Part shown: positions 21,374 to 62,575 of the stretch, piece by piece
Position numbering within the stretch: position 1 is the stretch's first letter
Layout: each line of letters begins with the position of its first letter
Assembly: GCA_002269645.1 (NCBI GenBank)
Contig: NIVC01001724.1
Location: 1 to 64,000 of the forward strand
Source of the DNA: Macrostomum lignano
Lineage: Eukaryota
Direction: 5' to 3'
Length of the DNA stretch: 64,000 bases
Notes under the pieces: generated by a model
What the model saw: the letters and a program-made list of their open reading frames with translations, nothing else
The model's database searches: none
What the model was told of the DNA's origin: nothing
Position numbers and translations under genes: made by a program

Positions 21374-23334
21374 TCAGATCATCTCCCTAAGCAGGCCGTT
21401 AATGTACTCGTCTCGACTGCAACTAAGCGGCTGCCGCTTCCTAATCAATTCCGGCTGACTCTCGTTGCCCCTAAATCTGGCCTCGGCCTTGGCCCAGCCG
21501 CCTAGCGGTGCTTTCAGCCGCATCGGAGCCAGATAGCTGGCCGCCTGTACAAATGCCGGGCCGCAGGTGGCCAGCTCGTGCACCAGATCCTCAATGCACA
21601 ATAGGCCGTATTTGCCCAGTGCGGCTTCGATAGCGGCATTATCCGTGATGGGAACTGGCCGCTGCTGATTGCCGGCCTCTGATTGGCTGCCGCTGGCCCG
21701 GCCGCGCTTGTACACAAGCTCGCGTACCGAGCGCATATCCGGAGCGCCCCAGGCTACAAACGGATCCAATAGGCGCAGCACAGATAGGCAGGCGGGCGTG
21801 GGCTTAGCAAACACGGCTGTGTTTAGCCGGGTCAGGCGGAACAGGCGCAGAGCTTTCACAATGCGCGGGTCCATGCCGGCCGAGCGGCCCCGACAGCGGA
21901 CAATCAGGATTGGCCGCTCAGCTGACGACTGCGGCGCCTCCTCGGCTGCTGTCGGCAGCAGGGTAACCACAGGAGCCATCGGCTCTGCCGCTGCTGGCCT
22001 GCGCGCCAGTCGGTTCAACCTGTTGGTGTCGCGGTCCTGGAATGAGTTGAACAAACTGACTCGTAGTTGATGGAGAAAGCTCATTACATGACTTCCTGAC
22101 ATTCCCTCCTGACACATCTGCGAGTAGCTTATCTGACATTCCCTCCTGACACATCTGCGAGTAGCTTATCTGACATTCCCTCTGACCATCTGCGAGTAGC
22201 TTATCTGACATTCCCTCTGACCATCTGCGAGTAGCTTATCTGACATTCCCTCTGATACATCTGCGAGTAGCTTATCTGACATTCCCTCTGATACATCTGC
22301 GAGTAGCTTATCTGACATTCCCTCTGATACATCTGCGAGTAGCTTATCTGACATTCCCTCTGACACATCTAAGAGTAGCTTATCTGACATTCCCTCTGAC
22401 ACATCTAAGAGTAGCTTATCTGACATTCCCTCTGACACATCTGCGAGTAGCTTATCTGACATTCCCTCTGACACATCTAAGAGTAGCTTATCTGACATCC
22501 CCTCTGACACATCTAAGAGTAGCTTATCTGACATTCCCTCTGACACATCTAAGAGTAGCTTATCTGACATTCCCTCTGACACATCTGCGAGTAGCTTATC
22601 TGACATTCCCTCTGATACATCTGCGAGTAGCTTATCTGACATCCCCTCTGACACATCTGCGAGTAGCTTATCTGACATTCCCTCTGATACATCTGCGAGT
22701 AGCTTATCTGACATTCCCTCTGACACATCTGCGAGTAGCTTATCTGACATTCCATCTGACACACCCAGCTCATCTGACATTCCCACCGACATACCCAGCT
22801 CATCTGACATCCCCTCTGACACATCTAAGAGTAGCTTATCTGACATTCCCTCTGACACATCTGCGAGTAGCTTATCTGACATTCCATCTGACACACCCAG
22901 CTCATCTGACATTCCCACCGACATACGCAGCTCATCTGACATTCCATCTGACACACCCAGCTCATCTGACATTCCCACCGACATACCCAGCTCATCTGAC
23001 ATTCCCACCGACATACGCAGCTCATCTGACATTCCATCTGACACACCCAGCTCATCTGACATTCCCACCGACATACCCAGCTCATCTGACATTCCCACCG
23101 ACATACCCAGCTCATCTGACATTCCTTTACCTTCAGCCTGCCCAGTTTCACCAGCCGTTCAACCCTAACAAAAGCTTCTTTGGTCTTCTTAACCCGCTGT
23201 CGCCTGGCCAGCCGCCTGTCCGCCGCCTGCTGCCGAGCCCGCGTCGACCGGGCCTCCATGGCGGCCTTGCGGCGTTTTAACATCGTCTCCTGAACTGTGG
23301 GCAGAGCGCCCGCGCGTCTCTTGGTGCCGGCCAT
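21374..23334 (-). CDS. RPL7L1: Ribosomal protein L7-like (uL30 family, RPL7L1/Rlp7 type); exons 23334-23131, 22036-21374 (288 aa)
   Basis: LPTVQETMLKRRK N-terminus, LRLFRLTRLNTAVF, PFVAWGAPDMRSVRELVYKRG, ITDNAAIEAALGKYGLLCIEDLVHEL and INGLLREM. Phase-0 AAG|GTAAAG…TTCCAG|GAC intron. Confidence 0.88.
22095..23123. repeat. 36-bp and 30-bp minisatellites filling the RPL7L1 intron (CTGACATTCC core)
   Basis: Directly visible; the two unit types switch at about 22750. Confidence 0.95.
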
Positions 23335-40000: not shown

Positions 40001-43000
40001 TGGAGACAGACAATGGTAGATTGTGTCTATGGTTTTGGAGTCAGGCAATGGTAGATTGTGTCTATGGTTTTTGAGGCAGACAATGGTAGATTGTGTCTAT
40101 GGTTTTGGAGACAGACAAGGATTGATATTTCACGAGTAGAGAGAAGCCACTAATCTTGTCTATGACAAAACCATATACACAAGCACATTGTCTCATGAAT
40201 GTTGCGTTGAATAATGAGCCTAGATCCTAAGACAATGATCCATGCATGACAACATAAAATAAGTAATGAGTTGCTTTTTCTCAAAATTAAATATTAAATT
40301 AAATTCTACTAATATCCACCTTATTGTACCTGGTACATTGTTGACTGTTGCCTCCAGTCCAGATGCTTTGCGCCAGGAGTCCATGCTTCCTTTCCCACCG
40401 GACCGGATCCGGATATGACACTAATACTGCAGCAAAGCACACCCCATGTTATATTTCATATATAGTAAGCGAAGCCCTCAAAGTCTGTCTGTAAGCAGAT
40501 TTTGAGACTAGTCTGAGAATTGATATTTAAAGAAGAATTAGTGCGACGATTACATTAGAAAGGGGCCGGTGTGTCTGACCCCCCCCCACCTTGACAAGCA
40601 TGACAAGACAAATTAACAACATGTAGTCATGCCAGTCCTAGAGCAGACAGGGTGGAAGCGAGAGCAGAATCTGAGAAATGCTTAATACTCGCACAGTTTA
40701 TATGGTGACGGTTGTTAAACAGTGAGGCAGTAAAATGAGTAATTTTGTACCGTAAAATCAATATCAAATTTTCATAAACTATAAAGGGGATGTCAACTTA
40801 AGCACCAGAATGGAGCCCGAAGTTTAGCTCCGGACCAAACCGACTGCAATCGATAACTTGTCGGCCCAGACGACTAGAATCGCCGAGACATCCCATCCGG
40901 CTCCCTTCCTTGGGGTCCCAGGGGATAAAGGGGATAAAATGGGGATCTCATGTCAACTTAAGGCTCTGGAATGGAGCCCGAAGTTCAGCTCCGGCCCAAA
41001 CCGACTGCAATCGATAACTTGTCGGCCCAGACGACTAGAATCGCCGAGACATCCCATCCGGCTCCCTTCCTTGGGGTCCCAGGGGATAAAGGGGATAAAA
41101 TGGGGATCTCATGTCAACTTAAGGCTCTGGAATGGAGCCCGAAGTTCAGCTCCGGCCCAAACCGACTGCAATCGATAACTTGTCGGCCCAGACGACTAGA
41201 ATCGCCGAGACATCCCATCCGGCTCCCTTCCTTGGGGTCCCAGGGGATAAAGGGGATAAAATGGGGATCTCATGTCAACTTAAGGCTCTGGAATGGAGCC
41301 CGAAGTTCAGCTCCGGCCCAAACCGACTGCAATCGATAACTTGTCGGCCCAGACGACTAGAATCGCCGAGACATCCCATCCGGCTCCCTTCCTTGGGGTC
41401 CCAGGGGATAAAGGGGATAAAATGGGGATCTCATGTCAACTTAAGGCTCTGGAATGGAGCCCGAAGTTCAGCTCCGGCCCAAACCGACTGCAATCGATAA
41501 CTTGTCGGCCCAGACGACTAGAATCGCCGAGACATCCCATCCGGCTCCCTTCCTTGGGGTCCCAGGGGATAAAGGGGATAAAATGGGGATCTCATGTCAA
41601 CTTAAGGCTCTGGAATGGAGCCCGAAGTTCAGCTCCGGCCCAAACCGACTGCAATCGATAACTTGTCGGCCCAGACGACTAGAATCGCCGAGACATCCCA
41701 TCCGGCTCCCTTCCTTGGGGTCCCAGGGGATAAAGGGGATAAAATGGGGATCTCATGTCAACTTAAGGCTCTGGAATGGAGCCCGAAGTTCAGCTCCGGC
41801 CCAAACCGACTGCAATCGATAACTTGTCGGCCCAGACGACTAGAATCGCCGAGACATCCCATCCGGCTCCCTTCCTTGGGGTCCCAGGGGATAAAGGGGA
41901 TAAAATGGGGATCTCATGTCAACTTAAGGCTCTGGAATGGAGCCCGAAGTTCAGCTCCGGCCCAAACCGACTGCAATCGATAACTTGTCGGCCCAGACGA
42001 CTAGAATCGCCGAGACATCCCATCCGGCTCCCTTCCTTGGGGTCCCAGGGGATAAAGGGGATAAAATGGGGATCTCATGTCAACTTAAGGCTCTGGAATG
42101 GAGCCCGAAGTTCAGCTCCGGCCCAAACCGACTGCAATCGATAACTTGTCGGCCCAGACGACTAGAATCGCCGAGACATCCCATCCGGCTCCCTTCCTTG
42201 GGGTCCCAGGGGATAAAGGGGATAAAATGGGGATCTCATGTCAACTTAAGGCTCTGGAATGGAGCCCGAAGTTCAGCTCCGGCCCAAACCGACTGCAATC
42301 GATAACTTGTCGGCCCAGACGACTAGAATCGCCGAGACATCCCATCCGGCTCCCTTCCTTGGGGTCCCAGGGGATAAAGGGGATAAAATGGGGATCTCAT
42401 GTCAACTTAAGGCTCTGGAATGGAGCCCGAGGTTCAGCTCCGGCCCAAACCGACTGCAATCGATAACTTGTCGGCCCAGACGACTAGAATCGCCGAGACA
42501 TCCCATCCGGCTCCCTTCCTTGGGGTCCCAGGGGATAAAGGGGATAAAATGGGGATCTCATGTCAACTTAAGGCTCTGGAATGGAGCCCGAAGTTCAGCT
42601 CCGGCCCAAACCGACTGCAATCGATAACTTGTCGGCCCAGACGACTAGAATCGCCGAGACATCCCATCCGGCTCCCTTCCTTGGGGTCCCAGGGGATAAA
42701 GGGGATAAAATGGGGATCTCATGTCAACTTAAGGCTCTGGAATGGAGCCCGAAGTTCAGCTCCGGCCCAAACCGACTGCAATCGATAACTTGTCGGCCCA
42801 GACGACTAGAATCGCCGAGACATCCCATCCGGCTCCCTTCCTTGGGGTCCCAGGGGATAAAGGGGATAAAATGGGGATCTCATGTCAACTTAAGGCTCTG
42901 GAATGGAGCCCGAGGTTCAGCTCCGGCCCAAACCGACTGCAATCGATAACTTGTCGGCCCAGACGACTAGAATCGCCGAGACATCCCATCCGGCTCCCTT

Positions 43001-46000
43001 CCTTGGGGTCCCAGGGGATAAAGGGGATAAAATGGGGATCTCATGTCAACTTAAGGCTCTGGAATGGAGCCCGAAGTTTAGCTCCGGCCCAAACCGACTG
43101 CAATCGATAACTTGTCAGCCCAGACGACTAGAATCGCCGAGACATCCCATCCGGCTCCCTTCCTTGGGGTCCCAGGGGATAAAGGGGATAAAATGGGGAT
43201 CTCATGTCAACTTAAGGCTCTGGAATGGAGCCCGAAGTTCAGCTCCGGCCCAAACCGACTGCAATCGATAACTTGTCGGCCCAGACGACTAGAATCGCCG
43301 AGACATCCCATCCGGCTCCCTTCCTTGGGGTCCCAGGGGATAAAGGGGATAAAATGGGGATCTCATGTCAACTTAAGGCTCTGGAATGGAGCCCGAAGTT
43401 CAGCTCCGGCCCAAACCGACTGCAATCGATAACTTGTCGGCCCAGACGACTAGAATCGCCGAGACATCCCATCCGGCTCCCTTCCTTGGGGTCCCAGGGG
43501 ATAAAGGGGATAAAATGGGGATCTCATGTCAACTTAAGGCTCTGGAATGGAGCCCGAAGTTTAGCTCCGGCCCAAACCGACTGCAATCGATAACTTGTCG
43601 GCCCAGACGACTAGAATCGCCGAGACATCCCATCCGGCTCCCTTCCTTGGGCTGACTGAAACTCCTCTCGCTGGCCCCTAAACTGTTGCTCAGTAGGCTT
43701 TCGCTGCTGTGGTAATGCGTTTTCTCTAGCATAAAGTCTGGCAACAAGGCTGCGTGGAAGAGCGAAATCAACAAAGCGAAGGCCGGCACCAGACCTTCGA
43801 TAGCTACATATGTATCTTGGTGGTAAGCGTAGCAGCCCAGGAGTTTGAGCACTGCCATTACGCTCGTACATGACAATCGCAGCCTGCAGTCCTACTTCCT
43901 GCTTTTGCTGACGAGTAGAAGCCAGGAAGAAGTTGCAATCCTGGATCTCTAAAACCAAAGCGATTGTCCGCTGCTGTCACACACTCTAAGAATCACGCGG
44001 TAGGATTTTGAATTATGGCGCGAGAAAACGACAGCTAGAAAAATCAAGACGGATGCCACCGACCGAATCGGTTGCTCCAGTTTTCTAGCGGCGTCGCTTG
44101 CCGAAACTTCCAACACTCCCGGCGGCTTGGATGTGTAACTCAAAGTCTCTCCAGGAGTCACCTTCGTAGCTATCGAGAACCTCCTTGACAGGAATGTTTT
44201 GAATGTAATAATCGGCTTGATTTAGTTGATACGGATCCACCGAAACCTCTGACAAATTCACTGTGTGAATTCGGGGAACCCCGAGCTTTTTGGATCCAGC
44301 GGGTTGACAGCAATCCATGCCCTTGTGTTAGCAGGGGGGCACGCTTCAGATCACAGTTGAAGTGCAGCTGCTCAATTTCGTTCAGTTCGTTGGACAAGAG
44401 CACTCGGCGCATGAAATTCTGACCGAATTCGAACAACGATAGCCCTGTCCATGACGGTGGAGCTGTTTAAATGATTCAAAACCTGGATGCGCCCGGTTGT
44501 ACTTTGCCATCGAGGTCTCGATAACAACGTCTAATCGGCTGGGCTCACTGAAGCCGGCTGACGGCAGCCACTGATACGGTTTGTGCCTCTCGTTAACACA
44601 TTTGTCCTGCTTAATGGCAGCAAAGCAGCACATAGCGGAACATAGTGGCACAGCGGATGTCTCTGCGATTCTAGTCGTCTGGGCCGACAAGTTATCGATT
44701 GCAGTCGGTTTGGGCCGGAGCTGAACTTCGGGCTCCATTCCAGAGCCTTAAGTTGACATGAGATCCCCATTTTATCCCCTTTATCCCCTGGGACCCCAAG
44801 GAAGGGAGCCGGATGGGATGTCTCGGCGATTCTAGTCGTCTGGGCCGACAAGTTATCGATTGCAGTCGGTTTGGGCCGGAGCTGAACTTCGGGCTCCATT
44901 CCAGAGCCTTAAGTTGACATGAGATCCCCATTTTATCCCCTTTATCCCCTGGGACCCCAAGGAAGGGAGCCGGATGGGATGTCTCGGCGATTCTAGTCGT
45001 CTGGGCCGACAAGTTATCGATTGCAGTCGGTTTGGGCCGGAGCTGAACTTCGGGCTCCATTCCAGAGCCTTAAGTTGACATGAGATCCCCATTTTATCCC
45101 CTTTATCCCCTGGGACCCCAAGGAAGGGAGCCGGATGGGATGTCTCGGCGATTCTAGTCGTCTGGGCCGACAAGTTATCGATTGCAGTCGGTTTGGGCCG
45201 GAGCTGAACTTCGGGCTCCATTCCAGAGCCTTAAGTTGACATGAGATCCCCATTTTATCCCCTTTATCCCCTGGGACCCCAAGGAAGGGAGCCGGATGGG
45301 ATGTCTCGGCGATTCTAGTCGTCTGGGCCGACAAGTTATCGATTGCAGTCGGTTTGGGCCGGAGCTGAACTTCGGGCTCCATTCCAGAGCCTTAAGTTGA
45401 CATGAGATCCCCATTTTATCCCCTTTATCCCCTGGGACCCCAAGGAAGGGAGCCGGATGGGATGTCTCGGCGATTCTAGTCGTCTGGGCCGACAAGTTAT
45501 CGATTGCAGTCGGTTTGGGCCGGAGCTGAACTTCGGGCTCCATTCCAGAGCCTTAAGTTGACATGAGATCCCCATTTTATCCCCTTTATCCCCTGGGACC
45601 CCAAGGAAGGGAGCCGGATGGGATGTCTCGGCGATTCTAGTCGTCTGGGCCGACAAGTTATCGATTGCAGTCGGTTTGGGCCGGAGCTGAACTTCGGGCT
45701 CCATTCCAGAGCCTTAAGTTGACATGAGATCCCCATTTTATCCCCTTTATCCCCTGGGACCCCAAGGAAGGGAGCCGGATGGGATGTCTCGGCGATTCTA
45801 GTCGTCTGGGCCGACAAGTTATCGATTGCAGTCGGTTTGGGCCGGAGCTGAACTTCGGGCTCCATTCCAGAGCCTTAAGTTGACATGAGATCCCCATTTT
45901 ATCCCCTTTATCCCCTGGGACCCCAAGGAAGGGAGCCGGATGGGATGTCTCGGCGATTCTAGTCGTCTGGGCCGACAAGTTATCGATTGCAGTCGGTTTG

Positions 46001-49000
46001 GGCCGGAGCTGAACTTCGGGCTCCATTCCAGAGCCTTAAGTTGACATGAGATCCCCATTTTATCCCCTTTATCCCCTGGGACCCCAAGGAAGGGAGCCGG
46101 ATGGGATGTCTCGGCGATTCTAGTCGTCTGGGCCGACAAGTTATCGATTGCAGTCGGTTTGGGCCGGAGCTGAACTTCGGGCTCCATTCCAGAGCCTTAA
46201 GTTGACATGAGATCCCCATTTTATCCCCTTTATCCCCTGGGACCCCAAGGAAGGGAGCCGGATGGGATGTCTCGGCGATTCTAGTCGTCTGGGCCGACAA
46301 GTTATCGATTGCAGTCGGTTTGGGCCGGAGCTGAACTTCGGGCTCCATTCCAGAGCCTTAAGTTGACATGAGATCCCCATTTTATCCCCTTTATCCCCTG
46401 GGACCCCAAGGAAGGGAGCCGGATGGGATGTCTCGGCGATTCTAGTCGTCTGGGCCGACAAGTTATCGATTGCAGTCGGTTTGGGCCGGAGCTGAACTTC
46501 GGGCTCCATTCCAGAGCCTTAAGTTGACATGAGATCCCCATTTTATCCCCTTTATCCCCTGGGACCCCAAGGAAGGGAGCCGGATGGGATGTCTCGGCGA
46601 TTCTAGTCGTCTGGGCCGACAAGTTATCGATTGCAGTCGGTTTGGGCCGGAGCTGAACTTCGGGCTCCATTCCAGAGCCTTAAGTTGACATGAGATCCCC
46701 ATTTTATCCCCTTTATCCCCTGGGACCCCAAGGAAGGGAGCCGGATGGGATGTCTCGGCGATTCTAGTCGTCTGGGCCGACAAGTTATCGATTGCAGTCG
46801 GTTTGGGCCGGAGCTGAACTTCGGGCTCCATTCCAGAGCCTTAAGTTGACATGAGATCCCCATTTTATCCCCTTTATCCCCTGGGACCCCAAGGAAGGGA
46901 GCCGGATGGGATGTCTCGGCGATTCTAGTCGTCTGGGCCGACAAGTTATCGATTGCAGTCGGTTTGGGCCGGAGCTGAACTTCGGGCTCCATTCCAGAGC
47001 CTTAAGTTGACATGAGATCCCCATTTTATCCCCTTTATCCCCTGGGACCCCAAGGAAGGGAGCCGGATGGGATGTCTCGGCGATTCTAGTCGTCTGGGCC
47101 GACAAGTTATCGATTGCAGTCGGTTTGGGCCGGAGCTGAACTTCGGGCTCCATTCCAGAGCCTTAAGTTGACATGAGATCCCCATTTTATCCCCTTTATC
47201 CCCTGGGACCCCAAGGAAGGGAGCCGGATGGGATGTCTCGGCGATTCTAGTCGTCTGGGCCGACAAGTTATCGATTGCAGTCGGTTTGGGCCGGAGCTGA
47301 ACTTCGGGCTCCATTCCAGAGCCTTAAGTTGACATGAGATCCCCATTTTATCCCCTTTATCCCCTGGGACCCCAAGGAAGGGAGCCGGATGGGATGTCTC
47401 GGCGATTCTAGTCGTCTGGGCCGACAAGTTATCGATTGCAGTCGGTTTGGGCCGGAGCTGAACTTCGGGCTCCATTCCAGAGCCTTAAGTTGACATGAGA
47501 TCCCCATTTTATCCCCTTTATCCCCTGGGACCCCAAGGAAGGGAGCCGGATGGGATGTCTCGGCGATTCTAGTCGTCTGGGCCGACAAGTTATCGATTGC
47601 AGTCGGTTTGGGCCGGAGCTGAAACTTCGGGCTCCATTCCAGAGCCTTAAGTTGACATGAGATCCCCATTTTATCCCCTTTATCCCCTGGGACCCCAAGG
47701 AAGGGAGCCGGATGGGATGTCTCGGCGATTCTAGTCGTCTGGGCCGACAAGTTATCGATTGCAGTCGGTTTGGGCCGGAGCTGAACTTCGGGCTCCATTC
47801 CAGAGCCTTAAGTTGAAATGAGATCCCCATTTTATCCCCTTTATCCCCTGGGACCCCAAGGAAGGGAGCCGGATGGGATGTCTCGGCGATTCTAGTCGTC
47901 TGGGCCGACAAGTTATCGATTGCAGTCGGTTTGGGCCGGAGCTAAACTTCGGGCTCCATTCCAGAGCCTTAAGTTGACATGAGATCCCCATTTTATCCCC
48001 TTTATCCCCTGGGACCCCAAGGAAGGGAGCCGGATGGGATGTCTCGGCGATTCTAGTCGTCTGGGCCGACAAGTTATCGATTGCAGTCGGTTTGGGCCGG
48101 AGCTGAACTTCGGGCTCCATTCCAGAGCCTTAAGTTGACATGAGATCCCCATTTTATCCCCTTTATCCCCTGGGACCCCAAGGAAGGGAGCCGGATGGGA
48201 TGTCTCGGCGATTCTAGTCGTCTGGGCCGACAAGTTATCGATTGCAGTCGGTTTGGGCCGGAGCTGAAACTTCGGGCTCCATTCCAGAGCCTTAAGTTGA
48301 CATGAGATCCCCATTTTATCCCCTTTATCCCCTGGGACCCCAAGGAAGGGAGCCGGATGGGATGTCTCGGCGATTCTAGTCGTCTGGGCCGACAAGTTAT
48401 CGATTGCAGTCGGTTTGGGCCGGAGCTGAACTTCGGGCTCCATTCCAGAGCCTTAAGTTGAATGAGATCCCCATTTTATCCCCTTTATCCCCTGGGACCC
48501 CAAGGAAGGGAGCCGGATGGGATGTCTCGGCGATTCTAGTCGTCTGGGCCGACAAGTTATCGATTGCAGTCGGTTTGGGCCGGAGCTGAACTTCGGGCTC
48601 CATTCCAGAGCCTTAAGTTGACATGAGATCCCCATTTTATCCCCTTTATCCCCTGGGACCCCAAGGAAGGGAGCCGGATGGGATGTCTCGGCGATTCTAG
48701 TCGTCTGGGCCGACAAGTTATCGATTGCAGTCGGTTTGGGCCGGAGCTGAACTTCGGGCTCCATTCCAGAGCCTTAAGTTGACATGAGATCCCCATTTTA
48801 TCCCCTTTATCCCCTGGGACCCCAAGGAAGGGAGCCGGATGGGATGTCTCGGCGATTCTAGTCGTCTGGGCCGACAAGTTATCGATTGCAGTCGGTTTGG
48901 TCCGGAGCTGAACCTCGGGCTCCATTCTGGTGCTTAAGTTGACATCCCCTTATCACAGACCTGAAATATCACAGACCTGAAATATCACAAACCTGAAATA

Positions 49001-52000
49001 TCACAAACCTGAAATATCACAAACCTGAAATATCACAGACCTGAAATATCACAAACCTGAAATATCACAAACCTGAAATATCACAAACCTGAAATATCAC
49101 AGACCTGAAATATCACAGACCTGAAATATCACAAACCTGAAATATCACAAACCTGAAATATCACAAACCCGAAATATCACAAACCTGAAATATCACAAAC
49201 CCGAAATATCACAAACCTGAAATATCACAAACCGGAAATATCACGGACCTGAAATATCACAGACCTGAAATATCACAGACCTGAAATATCACAAACCTGA
49301 AATATCACAGACCTGAAATATCACAAACCCGAAATATCACAAACCTGAAATATCACAAACCCGAAATATCACAGACCTGAAATATCACAGACCTGAAATA
49401 TCACAAACCTGAAATATCACAGACCTGAAATATCACAGACCTGAAATATCACAAACCTGAAATATCACAGACCTGAAATATCACAAACCCGAAATATCAC
49501 AGACCTGAAATATCACAAACCTGAAATATCACAGACCTGAATATCACAGACCTGAAATATCACAGACCTGAAATATCACAAACCTGAAATATCACAAACC
49601 CGAAATATCACAGACCTGAAATATCACAGACCTGAAATATCACAGACCTGAAATATCACAAACCCGAAATATCACAGACCTGAAATATCACAGACCTGAA
49701 ATATCACAGACCTGAAATATCACAAACCTGAAATATCACAAACCCGAAATATCACAAACCCGAAATATCACAAACCCGAAACATCTCAAACCCGAAATGC
49801 GAGCTATCATAACTCCGAAAAGCAAAATACCGTTGGGTGTTGCTGGAACTTTCGGAGTTATTTGAGCAAAAGACTGAAAAAAACAGAGCGAAAACACATA
49901 TCAGCCACGTGTTGCATCGCAAGTTTTCCATTCTGAAGCAACTACAATCTCTTTCTTGCACCCACATGCCACTGTCCCGGAAAAGATCGACAGTTATGGC
50001 GTGTTCTGCGCGTTATTTTGCATCACGTGCTCTAACTTAAAAGAAAGGTAAAAGTAAATTATGCTGCAGATTTTATGCTGCTGATTAAACAACAGATCAA
50101 ACTCCGGTGTAAACTGCAGTTGACTCTTTAAGCACAGCACAGATTTCATCGATTAGATCTGCTCCTACACAAACCTCAGCAGCGAACGGAAATGAATTCA
50201 CGACACATGCCCTAACCCCCAAACCTTGCTCTCCTTCAGACCCAGCACGGGCTTGGCACAGTGTCCAGGCACGCGGAAATGTGCAGCGAAATGCCTGGTA
50301 AGCCAGCGCGATTTCAATAACATGATTTTTTGTATTGAGGGTCAAATTTGTTAAAGGGAAAGTGGCTGGGGGTAGCCAGCAGCAGCACTTCAATGCGTTA
50401 ATCCAGGTTTTAAGCATCGGATTATGCCTGACTTTATCGATAAGCTCGATCTAAAAGTAATCTAGGCAAGGGTCAGCACTCTCCACAGCTTCACTGTATA
50501 ACTGCTCAGAGCCAGCTGCTCAAATGCACAGCTCGAATGCACAGCTCAAAGGCACAGCTCAAAAGCACTCTCTCACAGCCTCCCTGTACAACTGCTCAGA
50601 GCCTGCTGCTCAAATGCACTCTCCCACAGCCTCCCTGTACAACTGCTCAGAGCCAGCTGCTCAAATGCACTCTCCCACAGCCTCCCTGTACAACTGCTCA
50701 GAGCCAGCTGCTCAAATGCACTCTCCCACAGCCTCTCTGTACAACTGCTCAGAGCCAGCTGCTCAAATGCACTCTCCCACAGCCTCCCTGTACAACCGCT
50801 CAGAGCCAGCTGCTCAAATGCACTCTCCCACAGCCTCTCTGTACAGCTGCTCAGAGCCAGCTGCTCAAATGCACTCTCCCACAGCCTCCCTGTACAACTG
50901 CTCAGAGCCAGCTGCTCAAATGCACTCTCCCACAGCCTCTCTGTACAACTGCTCAGAGCCAGCTGCTCAAATGCACTCTCCCACAGCCTCCCTGTACAAC
51001 CGCTCAGAGCCAGCTGCTCAAATGCACTCTCCCACAGCCTCTCTGTACAGCTGCTCAGAGCCAGCTGCTCAAATGCACTCTCCCACAGCCTCCCTGTACA
51101 ACTGCTCAGAGCCAGCTGCTCAAATGCACTCTCCCACAGCCTCCCTGTACAACCGCTCAGAGCCAGCTGCTCAAATGCACTCTCCCACAGCCTCTCTGTA
51201 CAGCTGCTCAGAGCCAGCTGCTCAAATGCACTCTCCCACAGCCTCCCTGTACAACTGCTCAGAGCCAGCTGCTCAAATGCACTCTCCCACAGCCTCCCTG
51301 TACAACTACAGCGTGCAGACGGCTCAGTCAGCTGACAGCCTTCAGAGCACCGAGTTCTCAGACACTGCCAGCGGCCTTATTATCGGCTCCTTCGAGCTGG
51401 AGCACTGCCTGACTCCGTCAGACTCGCTGCTCATCGTTCTGGGCGAAGCCTCCGACTCGATGGGCGCCTCTGAGCACAGATGTCGGAGGCTGACCATCTG
51501 CAACCAGATGGCCGACGGGAAGCGGCGACGACTGCGGCTTCAACTGAGCCTCCATCCGACCAGATCCTACACGATGAAGGTCTTCAAGCTGGCCAGCGGG
51601 TCCAGGCTGTGCGAGCAGCCCCGAGTTCGATTCTTCTTCACCAGGTCGGCGGGCGACGACCGGCCGCTGGTGCAGCTGGCGGCGCGACGCTGCGGCGCCT
51701 GCGGTGACGATGGCAGCGACTTCCGCTGCAACATGACGGCCTACCTGCGGAGCGGCTGGGTTGGCGGGCTGCTGCTAAAGCTGACCGGAGTTTTAGGCGA
51801 TCAAAGTGACTGGATCAAATTTCCGGCCAATCAGAGTCAGCGGGTGTCGGTGAGCTCACGGAGACCGTTTTGGGCGAGCAAACGGCGGGAGTAATGATTT
51901 AGTACGACTCACGTAGAATACTATAGCATTAAAATACTGTATTTTTTGCTTAAGGCAGCCTTCAAAGATTCTAAGAAACGAAATATTCTAGCCTTCTAAG

Positions 52001-57106: not shown

Positions 57107-58024
57107 GACTTCCTCTTCTTTTCCCGGCAATTCAGAAGATTCAGATTGTTATTTCATTTCATTTTGAGTAATTATATTTCCAATAACTTTGCTTGTCACT
57201 TAAAAACTAGTATAGCATTGCTATTTTGGTCTCTAGTGCCACTTTAATGTAGATGTTAATTTAAATAAGGGCAGACAGCTAAAGAAGGGCCAGGGCCAGT
57301 CTTCCCCAGGCCACTGATATCGATCGTTTTGGGATGGAGTAGAGGGGACCATTTTTTGCTTGGTCATTTTTTACAAAAAAACAGCCCCAGGCAAAGCAAT
57401 GCTGGATGCGCAGTTTAGTTATACTTATTGTTCTGAGGCTGGCGCTGCCCTGCAACATCATTTCGAGAAGAATATTTCTTGGAAATAAACGCAACTACAC
57501 TAAAAAAAATTTATTCACTGCGCCATAGCAGCGTACACTGAACCACGGCCGGAGACAGTAAATGACTGTACATTTGCATGTACACACCGGACAGAAATGT
57601 ATACGTACATCGAACCATTCATTTCTATAGTTTACTAGTTTACTGGCCAATTAGAGTTAATAATTAATTATAGCCGACAATTGGTTGAGGTCAGCATAAA
57701 ATAACATACATATATTAGAAACCAAAACTTAATTATTACAAGCCTATCTACTGATAAGCAATCCTCGTTTCTCAGTAAGTTCCAGTTAACAAATTAAAAC
57801 GAAAAGATTTTGCTCTTCGAAATGAGGCGAGCGCGAAAGCAAGCCAAGAGAAAATCTGCCAATTCTTCTGGCAAGACTTCGTCTCAATCTCCATCATCGC
57901 TGCAGCTAGTGAGTTCCATTGTATATGATATCCACTTGTACGATTTCCTGAAATTTTCCTAAAAATTACATGTAATATGTAATATGGGTCACTTTTCCAC
58001 CCTTTGACACTCTTACCCATCATC

Positions 58025-61000
58025 TACCACCTCTTCCCACCCCCTCTCCCACTCTTTTCTCACCCCCTCTCCCACTCTTTTCCCACCCCCTCTCCCACTC
58101 TTTTCCCACCCTCTCTCCTACTATTTTCCCACCCTCTCTCCCACTCTTTTCTCACCCCCTCTCCCACTCTTTTCTCACCCCCTCTCCCACTCTTTTCCCA
58201 CCCCCTCTCCCACTCTTTTCCCACCCTCTCTCCTACTATTTTCCCACCCTCTCTCCCACTCTTTTCCCACCCTCTCTCCCACTCTTTTCTCACCCCCTCT
58301 CCCACTCTTTTCCCACCCTCTCTCCCACTCTTTTCCCACCCTCTCTCCCACTATTTTCCCACCCTCTCCCACTCTTTTCCCACCCTCTCCCACTCTTTTC
58401 CCATCCTCTCCCACTCTTTACTCACCCTCTCCCACTCTTTTCCCATCCTCTCCCACTCTTTACTCACCCTCTCCCACTCTTTTCCCACCCTCTCCCACTC
58501 TTTTCCCACCCTCTCCCACTCTTTTCCCACCCTCTCCCACTCTTTTCCCATCCTCTCCCACTCTTTACTCACCCTCTCCCACTCTTTTCCCATCCTCTCC
58601 CACTCTTTACTCACCCTCTCCCACTCTTTTCCCACCCTCTCCCACTCTTTTCCCACCCTCTCCCACTCTTTTCCCACCCTCTCCCACTCTTTTCCCATCC
58701 TCTCCCACTCTTTACTCACCCTCTCCCACTCTTTTCCCACCCTCTCCCACTCTTTTCCCACCCTCTCCCACTCTTTTCCCACCCTCTCCCACTCTTTTCC
58801 CACCCTCTCCCACTCTTTTCCCACCCTCTCTCCCACTATTTTCCCACCCTCTCCCACTCTTTTCCCACCCGCTCCCATTCTTTTCCCATCCTCTCTCCCA
58901 CTCTTTACTCACCCTCTCTCCCATTCTTTTCCCACCCTCTCCCACTCTTTTCTCACCCTCTCTCCCACTCTTTACTCACCCTCTCTCCCACTCTTTTCCC
59001 ACCCTCTCTCCCACTCTTTACTCACCCTCTCTCCCACTCTTTACTCACCCTCTCTCCCACTCTTTTCTCACCCTCTCTCCCACTCTTTACTCACCCTCTC
59101 TCCCACTCTTTTCCCACCCTCTCTCCCACTCTTTACTCACCCTCTCTCCCACTCTTTTCCCACCCTCTCTCCCACTCTTTACTCACCCTCTCTCCCATTC
59201 CTTTCCCACCTCTCTCCCATTCTTTTCTCACCCCCTCTCCCACTCTTTTCCCACCCTCTCTCCCACTCTTTTCCCACCCTCTCTCCCACTCTTTTCTCAC
59301 CCCCTCTCCCACTCTTTTCCCACCCTCTCTCCCACTCTTTTCCCACCCTCTCTCCCACTCTTTTCTCACCCCCTCTCCCACTCTTTTCCCACCCTCTCCC
59401 ACTCTTTTCCCACCCTCTCTCCCACTCTTTTCCCACCCTCTCTCCCACTCTTTTCCCACCCTCTCTCCCACTCTTTTCCCACCCTCTCCCACTCTTTCCC
59501 CACCCTCTCCCACTCTTTTCCCACCCTCTCTCCCACTCTTTTCCCACCCTCTCCCACTCTTTTCCCACCCTCTCCCACTCTTTTCCCACCCTCTCCCACT
59601 CTTTTCCCACCCTCTCCCACTCTTTTCCCACCCTCTCCCACTCTTTTCCCACCCTCTCCCACTCTTTTCCCACCCTCTCTCCCACTCTTTTCCCACCCTC
59701 TCTCCCACTCTTTTCCCACCCTCTCCCACTCTTTTCCCACCCTCTCTCCCACTCTTTTCCCACCCTCTCCCACTCTTTTCCCACCCTCTCCCACTCTTTT
59801 CCCACCCTCTCCCACTCTTTTCCCACCTCTCTCCCACTCTTTTCCCACCCTCTCCCACTCTTTTCCCACCCTCTCCCACTCTTTTCCCACCCTCTCTCCC
59901 ACTCTTTTCCCACCCTCTCCCACTCTTTTCCCACCCTCTCTCCCACTCTTTTCCCACCCTCTCTCCCACTCTTTTCCCACCCTCTCCCACTCTTTTCCCA
60001 CCCTCTCTCCCACTCTTTTCCCACCCTCTCCCACTCTTTTCCCACCCTCAACCACTCTTTTCCCACCCTCTCTCCCACTCTTTTCCCACCCTCTCTCCCA
60101 CTCTTTTCCCACCCTCTCTCCCACTCTTTTCCCACCCTCTCTCCCACTCTTTTCCCACCCTCTCCCACTCTTTTCCCACCCTCTCTCCCACTCTTTTCCC
60201 ACCCTCTCCCACTCTTTTCCCACCCTCTCTCCCACTCTTTTCCCACCCTCTCTCCCACTCTTTTCCCACCCTCTCCCACTCTTTTCCCACCCTCTCTCCC
60301 ACTCTTTTCCCACCCTCTCCCACTCTTTTCCCACCCTCTCCCACTCTTTTCCCACCCTCTCCCACTCTTTTCCCACCCTCTCCCACTCTTTTCCCACCCT
60401 CTCCCACTCTTTTCCCACCCTCTCTCCCACTCTTTTTTCCCACCCTCTCTCCCACTATTTTCCCACCCTCTCTCCCACTCTTTTCCCACCCTCTCCCACT
60501 CTTTTCCCACCCTCTCTCCCACTCTTTTCCCACCCTCTCCCACTCTTTTCCCACCCTCTCCCACTCTTTTCCCACCCTCTCTCCCACTCTTTTCCCACCC
60601 TCTCTCCCACTCTTTTCCCACCCTCTCCCACTCTTTACTCACCCTCTCCCACTCTTTTCCCACCCTCTCCCACTCTTTTCCCACCCTCTCTCCCACTATT
60701 TTCCCACCCTCTCCCACTCTTTTCCCACCCGCTCCCATTCTTTTCCCATCCTCTCTCCCACTCTTTACTCACCCTCTCTCCCATTCTTTTCCCACCCTCT
60801 CCCACTCTTTTCCCACCCGCTCCCATTCTTTTCCCATCCTCTCTCCCACTCTTTACTCACCCTCTCTCCCATTCTTTTCCCACCCTCTCCCACTCTTTTC
60901 TCACCCTCTCTCCCACTCTTTACTCACCCTCTCTCCGACTCTTTTCCCACCCTCTCTCCCACTCTTTACTCACCCTCTCTCCCACTCTTTACTCACCCTC

Positions 61001-62575
61001 TCTCCCACTCTTTTCTCACCCTCTCTCCCACTCTTTACTCACCCTCTCTCCCACTCTTTTCCCACCCTCTCTCCCACTCTTTACTCACCCTCTCTCCCAC
61101 TCTTTACTCACCCTCTCTCTCACTCTTTTCCCACCCTCTCTCCCACTCTTTACTCACCCTCTCTCCCATTCTTTTCCCACCTCTCTCCCATTCTTTTCCC
61201 ACCCACTCCCACTCTTTTCCCACCCTCTCTCCCACTCTTTACTCACCCTCTCTCCCACTCTTTACTCACCCTCTCTCCCACTCATTACTCACCCTCTATC
61301 CCACTCTTTACTCACCCTCTCTCCCTCTCTCCCACTCTTTACTCACCCTCTCTCCCACTCTTTTCCCATCCTCTCTCCCACTCTTTTCCCACCCTCTCTC
61401 CCACTCTTTTCTCACCTTCTAAAACTCTTTTCCCACCCTCTCTCCCACTCTTTTCCCACCCTCTCTCCCACTCTTTTCCCACCCTCTCTCCCACTCTTTT
61501 CCCACCCTCTCTCCCACTCTTTTCCCATCCTCTCCCACTCTTTTCCCACCCTCTCTCCCACTCTTTTCCCATCCTCTCCCACTCTTTTCCCACCCTCTCT
61601 CCCACTCTTTTCCCATCCTCTCCCACTCTTTTCCCACCCTCTCTCCCACTCTTTTCCCATCCTCTCCCACTCTTTTCCCACCCTCTCTCCCACTCTTTTC
61701 CCATCCTCTCCCACTCTTTTCCCACCCTCTCTCCCACTCTTTTCCCACCCTCGCTCCCACTTTTTTCCCACCCTTGCTCCCACTCTTTTTCCCACCTTCT
61801 AAAACTCTTTTCCCACCCTCTCCCACTCTTCCCACCCTCTCTCCCACTCTTTTCCCACCCTCTCTCCCACTCTTTTCTCACCTTCTAAAACTCTTTTCAC
61901 ACCCTCGCTTCCACTCTTTTCCCACCCTCTCTCCCACTCTTTTCCAACCCTCTCTCCCACTCTTTTCTCACCTTCTAAAACTCTTTTCCCACCCTCTCTC
62001 CCACTCTTTTCTCACCTTCTAAAACTCTTTTCCCACCCTCTCTCCCACTCTTTTCTCACCTTCTAAATCTCTTTTCCCACCCTCTCTCCCACTCTTTTCC
62101 CACCCTCTCTCCCACTCTTTTCCCACCCTCTCTCCCACTCTTTTCCCACCCTCTCTCCCACTCTTTTCCCACCCTCTCTCCAACTCTTTTCCCACCCTCG
62201 CTCCCACTCTTTTCCCACCCTTGCTCCCACTCTTTTTCCCACCTTCTAAAACTCTTTTCCCACCCTCTCCCACTCTTCCCACCCTCTCTTCCACTCTTTT
62301 CCTACCCTCGCTCCCACTCTTTTCCCACCCTCGCTCCCACTCTTTTTCCCACCTTCTAAAACTCTTTTCCCACCCTCTCCCACTCTTCCCACCCTCTCTC
62401 CCACTCTTTTCCCACCTTCTAAAACTCTTTTCCCACCCTCTCCCACTCTTCCCACCCTCTCTCCCACTCTTTTCCCACCCTCTCTCCCACTCTTTTCTCA
62501 CCTTCTAAAACTCTTGGCCCACCCTCTTCCACTCTTCCCACCCTCTCTCCCACTCTTTTTCCCACTCTTTCCGTT
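58025..62575. repeat. ~4.5-kb G-free polypyrimidine-rich satellite (CCACTCTTTTCCCACCCTCT[CT])
   Basis: Directly visible 20/22-bp units, with almost no G on the + strand. Confidence 0.98.

What the first reader, a model, noticed from the sequence alone, without database searches (positions are those of the whole stretch)
40784..48950. 8.2-kb foldback-type transposon whose TIRs are amplified into two inverted 161-bp satellite arrays
Seen: ~18 head-to-tail 161-bp units on the left, ~27 inverted units on the right and a unique 1-kb core. The outermost unit at each end carries the same private sequence (AGGGGATGTCAACTTAAGCACCAGAATGG…GGACC), unlike internal units (…CTCATGTCAACTTAAGGCTCTGGAATGG…GGCCC). 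The two termini are therefore true TIRs rather than a chance satellite inversion. A TA dinucleotide flanks both ends (40782-83, 48951-52) with a 1-nt asymmetry. Known: Drosophila FB and Galileo have long, internally repetitive TIRs. Inference: this is an uncharacterised foldback family and a transposon-to-satellite conversion caught in progress, with arms homogenising while the core decays.
Basis: partly seen in the sequence, partly recalled or inferred. Interest (0 to 1): 0.9.

Follow-up and report, generated by a model that had tools for sequence, protein, structure and literature searches.

The report
Foldback transposon with satellite-array arms
This is a real 8.2-kb defective DNA transposon in the flatworm Macrostomum lignano whose two inverted ends have each been multiplied into arrays of a 161-bp repeat; it is a clear new example of an already known route from transposon ends to satellite DNA, in an unusual and little-known transposase lineage.

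Summary
There are 18 units of 161 bp at 40786-43651, 27 inverted units at 44655-48949 and a 1,003-bp core. Only the outermost unit of each arm carries the same private variants.

The window is contig NIVC01001724.1 of the M. lignano Mlig_3_7 assembly. The core is not anonymous. Its minus strand is the frameshifted C-terminal third of a transposase, plus 3' non-coding sequence. The transposase belongs to the PIF/Harbinger-ISL2EU-Spy (PHIS) supergroup: zf-C2H2 + HTH_Tnp_4 + DDE_Tnp_4-like, with invariant D197/D291/E372.

The outer units keep a terminus, G-N-GGATGTCAAC..., that is conserved in two related elements from other contigs, and those relatives have no 161-bp arrays. Internal units carry a derived version with a 5-nt insertion. 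Two M. lignano gene models read through another copy with identical internal junctions at a different locus.

The proposed TA duplication is not supported. No symmetric boundary gives a duplication of 2 nt or more. Four termini from three elements are flanked by AAA...TT(T/A), which resembles Spy elements (AAA|TTT, no TSD). However, the DDE spacing and terminal motif do not meet the Spy definition.

Verdict: a foldback-like, non-autonomous, Spy-like PHIS element. Tetris, Galileo and FB are precedents, so interest is moderate.

The parts
40770..40785 (.). Left host flank. It is a degenerate copy (11/16, in phase) of the 16-bp minisatellite unit that abuts the right end. It ends in AAA (40783-40785), the putative left half of the target.
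   Evidence: this is the best match of any position or rotation within 190 bp. A score of 11/16 or better has a frequency of 2.3e-4 in unique DNA of the window.
40786..40952 (+). Left outer unit. This is the true terminal inverted repeat (GGGGATG + 160 nt) in its ancestral form (GCACCAGAATGG, GGACC).
   Evidence: The first ~35 nt align with the termini of L003 and L005.
40953..43651 (+). Left internal array: 16 full 161-bp units plus an innermost 123-nt partial unit (43529-43651). The units are of the derived type (CTCAT insertion, GGCTCTGG, GGCCC).
43652..44079 (-). 3' non-coding region of the element, downstream of the transposase stop when read on the minus strand. It is homologous to relatives L004 and P0140.
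   Evidence: L004 aligns across the core to within ~75 nt of the left array. P0140 matches down to 43918.
44080..44654 (-). Transposase remnant, equivalent to residues ~362-560 of the intact relative P0122. It starts at the R(3)E catalytic motif. It carries an 8-nt deletion at the E codon region, at least 2 frameshifts and in-frame stops.
   Evidence: One search gives 72% nt identity to L001 from window ~44652.
44655..48782 (-). Right internal array: an innermost ~101-nt partial unit fused to the transposase breakpoint, plus 25 full units of the same derived type as in the left arm.
48783..48949 (-). Right outer unit. This is the true terminal inverted repeat and has the same private variants as the left outer unit.
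48950..49798 (.). Right host flank: TTA (48950-52) followed directly by a 16-bp minisatellite (TATCACAAACCTGAAA x53, from 48951). This is host target context, not part of the element.

Best explanation
This is a non-autonomous, internally deleted copy of a cut-and-paste DNA transposon of Macrostomum lignano. Its transposase belongs to a rare, divergent branch of the PIF/Harbinger-ISL2EU-Spy (PHIS, DDE_Tnp_4-type) supergroup.

**Shown**
- The ancestral element had a single ORF with an N-terminal C2H2 finger, an HTH_Tnp_4 domain and a D(93)D(80)E catalytic domain.
- Its termini begin G-N-GGATGTCAAC.
- In the window copy the 5' two thirds of the gene are gone. The last ~190 codons (frameshifted) and the 3' non-coding region remain.
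- The terminal ~130-160 bp is present as 18 tandem copies on one arm and 27 on the other.
- Only the outermost copy on each arm keeps the ancestral terminus.
- All internal copies share one derived variant.

**Inferred**
1. One duplication of the terminal module produced a derived unit. That unit was then amplified by unequal exchange or replication slippage.
2. The derived unit came to occupy both arms in one of two ways. Either gene conversion between the inverted arms spread it, or (more parsimoniously) the progenitor of the deletion derivative already had multi-unit TIRs, since another copy also has internal-type units.
3. The element is mobilised in trans through its outer units by an autonomous relative. 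Internal units have a 5-nt insertion exactly at the terminus and are probably not cleavage substrates.
4. Integration is Spy-like: between AAA and TTT-like host triplets, without target-site duplication.

The left array/core boundary is the natural inner end of the terminal region. The right one is a deletion breakpoint inside the ORF.
For: **Source.** The window is NIVC01001724.1 of GCA_002269645.1, which is M. lignano Mlig_3_7 (PMC5730564).

**Core is a transposase remnant.**
- The core's conceptual translation hits P0001 at E = 1.8e-16.
- Nucleotide homology to L001 starts flush with the right array.
- tblastn of P0122, P0140 and P0001 maps residues ~362-560 plus the 3' region onto 44654-43918.

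**Superfamily.**
- L001's upstream ORF scores 33.5 bits on HTH_Tnp_4 (cutoff 27).
- P0126 and P0127 score 27.4 and 32.4 bits on DDE_Tnp_4 (cutoff 24.8).
- P0122 has sub-threshold zf-C2H2, HTH_Tnp_4 and DDE_Tnp_4 hits.
- D197, K226, D253, D291, G293, R368 and E372 are invariant across 12 members. This matches the PHIS skeleton D..K..D..D..P..R(3)E given in PMC4122938.

**Termini.**
- GGGGATGTCAAC at both window ends, GAGGATGTCAAC at L003:102 (upstream of the intact 560-aa ORF) and GTGGATGTCAAC at L005:1886 (downstream of a decayed ORF).
- Outer units match L005 better than internal units do: 31/40 versus 29/47 aligned columns.

**Left boundary is natural.** The distance from the E motif to the 3' end is ~1126 nt in L005. 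In the window it is ~1118 nt if only one terminal unit is counted.

**Flanks.** The four termini are flanked by AAA, TAA, AAA and AAA. AAA is not among the most common 5' flanks in ~120 chance matches to the motif. The left flank continues the right-flank 16-bp repeat in phase.

**Second copy.** P0123 (UniRef A0A1I8IYQ6) and P0134 contain the same unit/core junctions with private substitutions. Their outer flanks are absent from the window.
Against: - No autonomous copy was found in M. lignano itself. The intact ORF comes from a metagenome contig of unknown organism.
- Only one complete copy with both flanks could be inspected, and no true empty site is available. AAA could therefore be part of the TIR rather than host DNA.
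- An extra T (48950) is unexplained.
- The other copy is known only from spliced gene models. It could be a segmental or whole-genome duplicate rather than a transposition product, although its flanking exons are absent from this 64-kb window.
- Unit counts and single-nucleotide variants rest on a PacBio CLR Canu assembly.
- The DDE spacing and the terminal motif do not fit the published Spy definition.
Confidence: 0.75

Rival explanations
1. It is a canonical PIF/Harbinger element that made a 3-bp TWA target-site duplication, since blurred by mutation: TAA at 40782-84 and TTA at 48950-52, with boundaries AGGGG...CCCC.
For: The transposase family hits HTH_Tnp_4 and DDE_Tnp_4, the Pfam models typical of PIF/Harbinger. 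TAA and TTA are both TWA triplets. L003's flank can also be read as TAA|AGAGG.
Against: This reading needs asymmetric termini (AGGGG versus CCCC) and a TSD mismatch. With the TIR starting at AG.GGATG, only 2 of 4 termini have a TWA flank (TAA, ATA, TAA, CAA). With it starting at G.GGATG, only 1 of 4 does. By contrast 11 of 12 flank nucleotides fit AAA|TTT. L003 shows a single ORF and no Myb/SANT second ORF, though that contig is incomplete. The D(93)D(80)E spacing is also atypical.
Confidence: 0.12
2. It is an assembly artefact. The inverted arrangement, or much of the array length, would have been created by Canu from palindromic or chimeric PacBio CLR reads or from collapse or expansion of a satellite.
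For: The assembly is CLR-based, and REAPR found only 64% of its bases error-free (PMC5730564). Units of 160 or 162 nt differ by 1-nt length changes typical of CLR consensus error.
Against: The structure is not a simple palindrome. The arms are unequal (18 versus 27 units). The 1-kb core is unique, asymmetric and homologous to a real gene. The two inner junctions differ, and the outer flanks are unrelated unique sequences. Arm variants are not mirrored between the arms. Independent M. lignano gene models (P0123, P0134) traverse unit(sense)-core-unit(antisense) with the same junctions at another locus.
Confidence: 0.06
3. The satellite came first. A pre-existing 161-bp satellite block was inverted or duplicated around an unrelated transposon fragment, and the matching end units mark an old array edge rather than transposon termini.
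For: The region is extraordinarily rich in tandem arrays: 53% of the window. The element also abuts another minisatellite.
Against: The first ~35 nt of the unit are the conserved terminus of related elements that have no 161-bp arrays, and in both relatives the terminus sits at the expected distance and orientation from the transposase gene. The core's 3' region runs into the left arm at the natural distance. A second locus has the same junctions. No other array in the window has an inverted partner.
Confidence: 0.05

Closest known systems
Tetris (Drosophila virilis foldback element; PMC4079207)
   Same: Non-autonomous. It has long TIRs containing a variable number of ~220-bp tandem repeats, a middle domain without coding capacity and array-size variation between copies. 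It is the documented source of kb-size satellite-like arrays.
   Different: Tetris has a distinct, non-repeated flanking domain (TIR-FD, up to 866 bp) outside the repeats. Here the outermost unit is itself homologous to the repeat unit over its whole length, so the repeat includes a copy of the terminus. Tetris makes 8-10-bp TSDs; none is seen here. The Tetris transposase is unknown; here a PHIS-type remnant is retained. Tetris TIRs reach at most 1,735 bp; here the arms are 2.9 and 4.3 kb (18 and 27 units).
Spy elements (PHIS supergroup; PMC4122938)
   Same: Flanks fit AAA|TTT (11 of 12 nt over four termini) and there is no target-site duplication. Relatives have a single transposase ORF with an N-terminal HTH. 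TIR length is very variable (9-1,474 bp in Spy). Spy also shares the DDE_Tnp_4-like fold skeleton with R(3)E.
   Different: The spacing is D(93)D(80)E rather than D(79-80)D(44-62)E. The terminus is G-N-GGATGTCA rather than GGANNNNG. There is an N-terminal C2H2 finger. Spy long TIRs were reported to have no subrepeat structure. Flatworms are not among the 21 species listed; the words platyhelminth and Schmidtea do not occur in that paper.
Galileo (P superfamily) and FB (Drosophila melanogaster); from my own knowledge, not re-checked here
   Same: These are the classic foldback architectures. Very long TIRs make up most of the element. They have internal tandem repeats whose number varies between copies and arms, and many copies are defective.
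   Different: They belong to different transposase superfamilies (P/THAP9-like for Galileo; MULE-related for FB). They make TSDs of 7 bp (Galileo) and 9 bp (FB). FB repeats are short (10/20/31 bp) rather than a 161-bp copy of the whole terminal module.
Canonical PIF/Harbinger and ISL2EU (PMC4482050)
   Same: They share the transposase supergroup (HTH + DDE_Tnp_4). Their TIRs usually start with G or GG, and their TIR length is variable (5-1,042 bp in PIF/Harbinger).
   Different: PIF/Harbinger makes a TWA TSD and has a second Myb/SANT ORF. ISL2EU makes an AT TSD in A|AT|T and has THAP and YqaJ ORFs. None of these features is seen here.

Membership tests
Foldback-like elements (architectural class: FB, Galileo, Tetris) | Long terminal inverted repeats make up most of the element | tested here: met
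   The arms are 2,866 and 4,295 bp of an 8,164-bp element.
Foldback-like elements (architectural class: FB, Galileo, Tetris) | TIRs are built of tandem subrepeats whose number varies | tested here: met
   18 versus 27 units of 161 bp.
Foldback-like elements (architectural class: FB, Galileo, Tetris) | Target-site duplication of 7-10 bp | tested here: not met
   No direct duplication of 2 nt or more under any symmetric boundary. Tetris makes 8-10 bp.
Foldback-like elements (architectural class: FB, Galileo, Tetris) | Several dispersed copies with the same ends | tested here: inconclusive
   At least one further locus is inferred from gene models P0123 and P0134. The M. lignano genome could not be searched, so the ends of other copies were not seen.
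PHIS supergroup (PIF/Harbinger-ISL2EU-Spy) | DDE_Tnp_4-type catalytic domain with the D..K..D..D..P..R(3)E skeleton | tested here: met
   P0126 and P0127 score above the DDE_Tnp_4 cutoff. D197, K226, D253, D291, R368 and E372 are invariant. The D2-to-R spacing is ~30-45 aa longer than the published range. The window copy retains only the part from R(3)E onward.
PHIS supergroup (PIF/Harbinger-ISL2EU-Spy) | N-terminal helix-turn-helix (HTH_Tnp_4) | tested here: met
   L001 scores 33.5 bits against a cutoff of 27. P0122 scores 21.3 bits, sub-threshold. This region is deleted in the window copy.
Spy | Insertion between AAA and TTT with no TSD | tested here: met
   The flanks are AAA|..|TTA (window), AAA| (L003) and |TTT (L005). 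The left flank continues the right-flank repeat in phase. Caveat: n = 3 elements and no true empty site.
Spy | D(79-80)D(44-62)E spacing | tested here: not met
   D(93)D(80)E, based on invariant residues.
Spy | Terminal 5'-GGANNNNG-3' | tested here: not met
   The termini are GGGGATGT, GAGGATGT and GTGGATGT. GGA is present at positions 3-5, but the register and the final G do not fit.
Spy | Single long ORF in autonomous copies | tested here: inconclusive
   L003 has one called gene (560 aa) in 3,023 bp, but the contig lacks the 3' end of the element.
Spy | Clade membership and the 15 Spy-specific conserved residues | not testable with these tools
   No Spy reference proteins are held, and no supplements are available as text.
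PIF/Harbinger (canonical) | 3-bp TWA target-site duplication | tested here: not met
   TAA versus TAT, or AAA versus TTA, under symmetric boundaries. Only 1-2 of 4 termini have a TWA flank.
PIF/Harbinger (canonical) | Second ORF with a Myb/SANT domain | tested here: inconclusive
   None in L003 or in the core, but no complete autonomous copy was seen.
ISL2EU | AT TSD within A|AT|T; THAP in the transposase; YqaJ second ORF | tested here: not met
   The flanks are not AAT|GG. P0122 has a C2H2 finger, not THAP, and no YqaJ hit.

The most novel reading that the evidence does not exclude
The transposase defines an undescribed PHIS clade (C2H2 + HTH + D93D80E; only ~105 cluster representatives among 1.84 billion proteins). 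Like Spy, it integrates at AAA|TTT without duplicating the target. In this clade, tandem amplification of the whole terminal module, terminus included, is a recurrent family trait rather than an accident of one copy. A distant marine relative also has tandem 90-bp units containing AAAGTTGTCAAC upstream of its ORF. Arrays of pseudo-termini could then serve as alternative ends or as transposase sinks, and could seed dispersed satellites in a genome already unusually rich in tandem repeats.
Probability: 0.2. Interest if true: 0.65.

Novelty: new variant of a known kind. Interest (0 to 1): 0.42.

Why it matters
It gives a clean, datable snapshot of how a transposon end becomes a satellite. The ancestral, presumably functional terminus survives only in the outermost unit of each arm. 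A slightly altered copy of the whole terminal module has been multiplied about 43 times.

It extends the foldback/satellite phenomenon, documented mainly in Drosophila, to a flatworm and to the PHIS supergroup. It also suggests that integration without target-site duplication, so far a hallmark of Spy, occurs in a second, divergent branch.

Practically, it flags UniProt/UniParc gene models of M. lignano as chimeras that translate satellite units. It also marks a 2.9-kb near-perfect inverted repeat that is likely to be unstable and hard to assemble in a model organism used for transgenesis.

Tried and rejected
1. **Pfam on the core ORFs alone:** no hits. The family was recognised only through relatives.
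2. **Exact-sequence look-ups** of the 122-aa unit ORF and of both junction ORFs in public assemblies: nothing on record. Repeats are not gene-called, so there is no independent read-level support.
3. **Metagenome scan for GNGGATGTCAACTKARG:** 120 loci, all chance matches with no extension beyond the motif. It served only as a null for flank composition.
4. **L126** (distant 1,043-aa relative, 5.9-kb contig): no convincing TIR pair.
5. **L127-L130** (P0256 on four contigs): the apparent 3' boundary at L127:4940 lies in a region of tandem-repeat variation and two contigs share the same continuation, so it is not an element end.
6. **tblastn extension of transposase homology into unit-encoded residues** (RPKPTAIDNLSAQTTRIAETS): rejected. 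BLASTP gives E = 10, nucleotide local scores are at the shuffle mean, and the alignment is out of register by 18 nt.
7. **RNA origin of the unit:** no Rfam family and no tRNA in the window.
8. **TA (Tc1/mariner-type) TSD, TWA, AT, ANT, CWG and TNA TSDs:** none fits symmetric boundaries.
9. **Whole-arm mirror copying:** the variants in left units 10, 13 and 14 have no mirrored counterparts in the right arm.
10. **Literature search for Macrostomum satellites or DNA transposons:** nothing specific. The Spy supplements are not held.

Full report
**1. Observation**

TRF reports a 161-bp array at 40790-43651 (17.8 copies, 99% matches). Its reverse complement lies at 44655-48945 (26.7 copies, 99%). 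The repeat finder pairs the arms over as much as 2,829 nt and reports them as 100% complementary, which is a rounded figure.

I split both arms at the anchor TCAACTTAAG:
- Left arm: one outer unit (160 nt), 16 full internal units and an innermost partial unit of 123 nt.
- Right arm: one outer unit (160 nt), 25 full internal units and an innermost partial unit of about 101 nt.
- Thirty-six of the 41 full internal units are identical to the consensus.
- The exceptions are substitutions at recurrent positions (29 and 33) and 1-nt length changes. I would not trust these in a PacBio CLR consensus.

The two outermost units, and only these, begin AAGGGGATG|TCAACTTAAGCACCAGAATGG and contain GGACC. Internal units read GGGGATCTCATG|TCAACTTAAGGCTCTGGAATGG and GGCCC. 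The outer units are 165/167 identical to each other and differ from internal units at 11 aligned columns. The terminal 17-mer occurs exactly twice in the window, once at each end in opposite orientation.

The core (43652-44654, 1,003 bp) is unique. With the element masked, the 64-kb window contains no other significant inverted repeat.

**2. Where the window comes from**

A single-exon Abi/SH3 ORF at 19463-20713 is recorded on NCBI contig NIVC01001724.1 of assembly GCA_002269645.1, at the same coordinates as in the window. NIVC01 is the Mlig_3_7 assembly of Macrostomum lignano, assembled with Canu from PacBio CLR plus Illumina/454 data. In that genome simple and tandem repeats make up 15% (PMC5730564). 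In this window they make up 53%, or 48% without the element.

**3. The core is a transposase remnant**

The core ORFs hit no Pfam family on their own. The minus strand nevertheless reads as coding sequence interrupted by frameshifts.

A conceptual concatenation hit one protein, P0001, at E = 1.8e-16. P0001 lies on a 1.4-kb Logan contig (L001). Nucleotide homology between L001 and the core is 72% over 395 nt. It begins at window position ~44652, flush with the inner end of the right array, and shows an 8-nt deletion exactly at the catalytic glutamate codon region.

Evidence for the superfamily:
- The ORF upstream in L001 scores 33.5 bits on HTH_Tnp_4 (cutoff 27).
- A query built from L001 found an intact 560-aa relative, P0122, on JGI metagenome contig L003. 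P0122 has sub-threshold zf-C2H2, HTH_Tnp_4 and DDE_Tnp_4 matches.
- An exhaustive search with P0122 found only 105 cluster representatives among 1.84 billion proteins, the nearest at ~30% identity.
- Two of those, P0126 and P0127, pass the DDE_Tnp_4 cutoff.
- In an alignment of 12 members, D197, Y200, K226, G235, D253, D291, G293, R368 and E372 are invariant.

The invariant residues reproduce the D..K..D..D..P..R(3)E skeleton that the Spy paper gives for IS5, PIF/Harbinger, ISL2EU and Spy (PMC4122938). There is an extra ~30-45 residues between the second D and the R, giving D(93)D(80)E.

tblastn maps residues ~362-560 of P0122 onto 44654-44080. P0140 matches the region after the stop codon down to 43918. 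L004 aligns at the DNA level to within ~75 nt of the left array.

The window copy therefore retains only the segment from R(3)E to the C-terminus plus the 3' non-coding region. It cannot encode an active enzyme.

**4. The ends are true transposon termini**

The terminal motif recurs in the relatives, where the gene predicts it should be:
- L003 has GAGGATGTCAACTTAGGCC at position 102, about 800 bp upstream of the intact ORF.
- L005, a decayed copy from the same metagenome, has GTGGATGTCAACTGAAGGCC in reverse orientation at 1886, about 1.1 kb downstream of its E motif.

The alignment shows roughly 35 conserved nucleotides. Neither relative has a 161-bp array.

The outer window units are closer to L005 than the internal units are (31/40 versus 29/47 aligned columns). 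The internal units carry a 5-nt insertion inside the terminus (GGGGAT-CTCAT-GTCAAC) and an altered GGCTCTGG. I infer that the outer unit preserves the ancestral, presumably transposase-recognised end. I also infer that the amplified unit is a derived copy that has probably lost cleavage competence.

**5. Nature of the two inner junctions**

In L005 the distance from the E codon to the 3' terminus is ~1,126 nt. In the window, the E region to the left-arm boundary is ~980 nt. Adding the 8 deleted nt and one 130-nt terminal segment gives ~1,118 nt.

The left boundary (43651/43652) therefore looks like the natural continuity of the 3' region into a single terminal module. It does not look like a rearrangement. 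On that reading the repeat unit consists of two parts:
- about 123 nt of natural terminal sequence;
- a 38-nt linker, GTCCCA-GGGGATAAA-GGGGATAAAAT-GGGGATCTCATG, of unknown origin.

The right boundary (44654/44655) is a deletion breakpoint inside the ORF. tblastn extended homology into unit-encoded residues, but I rejected this. BLASTP gives E = 10, nucleotide scores equal the shuffle mean, and the register is off by 18 nt.

**6. Target site**

With symmetric boundaries there is no direct duplication of 2 nt or more:
- GGGG/CCCC gives AAA versus TTA.
- AGGGG/CCCCT gives TAA versus TAT.
- AAGGGG/CCCCTT gives ATA versus ATC.

Across four termini from three elements, the three nucleotides outside G-N-GGATG are AAA, TAA, AAA and AAA. 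On the plus strand these read AAA|...|TTA, AAA| and |TTT. AAA is not among the most common flanks in ~120 chance matches to the motif.

The right flank is a 16-bp minisatellite (TATCACAAACCTGAAA x53) that starts at 48951. The last 16 nt of the left flank match this unit at 11/16 in exactly the phase that ends with AAA. The background frequency of such a match is 2.3e-4. The array thus acts like a set of paralogous empty sites (..GAAA|TATCAC..). It indicates that AAA is host DNA and that nothing but a single unexplained T (48950) was added.

This is the signature described for Spy: AAA|TTT with no TSD (PMC4122938). It is not the signature of PIF/Harbinger (TWA), ISL2EU (AT), Pangu (ANT) or Nuwa (CWG, TNA) (PMC4482050).

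Two published Spy features fail, however: D(79-80)D(44-62)E and the terminal GGANNNNG. I therefore call the element Spy-like within PHIS, not a member of Spy.

**7. Other copies**

Two M. lignano gene models translate straight through another copy. These are P0123 (UniRef A0A1I8IYQ6, 'DUF3480 domain-containing protein') and P0134 (UniParc, 2,393 aa).
- Both contain the unit ORF MEPEVQLR(T)KP...IAETS fused to AVPLCSAMCCFAAIKQ..., the same right junction.
- P0123 also contains the left core/unit junction in antisense.
- P0134 covers more than 1.7 internal-type units.
- Both carry private substitutions (P>T, N>D and others). P0134 keeps a reading frame where the window copy is frameshifted.
- Their outer parts have no match in the window.

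At least one further locus therefore carries the same deletion derivative with multi-unit arms. Whether it arose by transposition or by the known large-scale duplication of this genome cannot be decided from proteins alone.

Amino-acid divergence between the copies is 1/99 in unit-encoded segments and about 8/143 in core segments. This is suggestive of arm homogenisation but is not significant.

**8. Mechanism (shown versus inferred)**

Shown:
- TE origin of the core;
- true termini in the outer units;
- one derived unit type amplified in both arms;
- no TSD.

Inferred:
- An initial duplication of the terminal module was followed by unequal exchange or slippage.
- The derived unit is shared between arms either through inter-arm gene conversion or, more parsimoniously given P0134, through inheritance from a progenitor that already had multi-unit TIRs.
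- The element is mobilised in trans via its outer units.
- The 2.9-kb near-perfect inverted repeat with a 1-kb spacer would be prone to hairpin formation and, if transcribed, to dsRNA formation.

**9. Comparison and novelty**

The architecture and the end-to-satellite route are known from several elements:
- Tetris has TIRs with ~220-bp tandem repeats that seeded satellite arrays, 8-10-bp TSDs and an outer non-repeated domain (PMC4079207).
- Galileo and FB are further precedents (my own knowledge, not re-checked here).

What is different here:
- the host phylum;
- the PHIS/Spy-like lineage, in a rare divergent clade;
- the absence of a TSD;
- a repeat unit that is a copy of the entire terminal module, terminus included.

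The Spy paper noted that long Spy TIRs have no subrepeat structure.

A distant marine relative (P0256, contigs L127-L130) has at least 2.5 tandem 90-bp units containing AAAGTTGTCAAC upstream of its ORF, and all four contigs break there. This hints that terminal tandem repeats may recur in the clade. It is only a hint.

**10. Verdict**

The feature is real and correctly delimited, and the foldback-transposon reading is largely right. The TSD claim is wrong, and the family assignment can be made much more precise. It is a new variant of a known kind and of moderate interest.

Noticed in passing
window 1-64000: Tandem repeats cover 53% of the window (40 TRF intervals, 29 arrays of 200 bp or more, each with a different unit). 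The published genome-wide figure is 15%. Genes sit between the arrays, and none of the other arrays has an inverted partner.
   Followed up: partly
window 58008-62570: A 4.5-kb minisatellite of 23-bp units (TCTCCCACTCTTTTCCCACCCTC) is almost pure pyrimidine on the + strand (GC skew -0.99, AT skew -0.54). It is a candidate for triplex or H-DNA.
   Followed up: no
window 48951-49798 and 40770-40785: A 16-bp minisatellite (x53) starts 2 nt after the last C (48949) of the element's right end. One degenerate in-phase unit lies on the other side of the element. The element apparently inserted into a proto-array that later expanded on one side only.
   Followed up: yes
P0123 (UniRef A0A1I8IYQ6) and P0134 (UPI0007A1D47C), M. 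lignano: These public gene models are chimeras. They translate the 161-bp satellite unit (MEPEVQLR...), the transposase remnant and unrelated flanking exons. The name 'DUF3480 domain-containing protein' is misleading for that segment.
   Followed up: partly
window 40786-48949, every unit: Each 161-bp unit carries an ATG-initiated ORF that runs through 2.3 units (122 aa). This produces dozens of identical spurious ORFs on the outward-to-inward strand of both arms.
   Followed up: yes
unit tail, e.g. window 40915-40952: The unit ends with three GGGGAT motifs (GGGGATAAA GGGGATAAAAT GGGGATCTCATG). AAAGGGGAT inside every unit mimics the flank-plus-terminus junction. These could be subterminal transposase-binding repeats or captured end junctions.
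   Followed up: no
L129:1-260 (also L127, L128, L130 starts): In a distant family member from Tara marine metagenomes, the region upstream of the 1,016-aa ORF has at least 2.5 tandem 90-bp units containing AAAGTTGTCAAC. Four independent contigs all break inside it.
   Followed up: partly
A2 alignment (P0124, P0125, P0128 etc.): Longer family members (~1,040 aa) share a C-terminal cysteine/histidine-rich block (C..C..G.R..GCC.HV) that is absent from the 560-aa P0122 and from the M. lignano remnant.
   Followed up: no
window 19463-20713 (-), 21374-22117 (-), 7525-7941 (+), 5238-5948 (+): Host genes lie close together. There is a single-exon Abi/SH3 gene whose closest named relative is a M. lignano paralogue at only 48% identity. 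There are also ORFs with a sub-threshold Ribosomal_L30 (L7-like) match, an LRR1 PH domain and a strictosidine-synthase-like domain. A PIF1-helicase gene model ends near 11278.
   Followed up: partly
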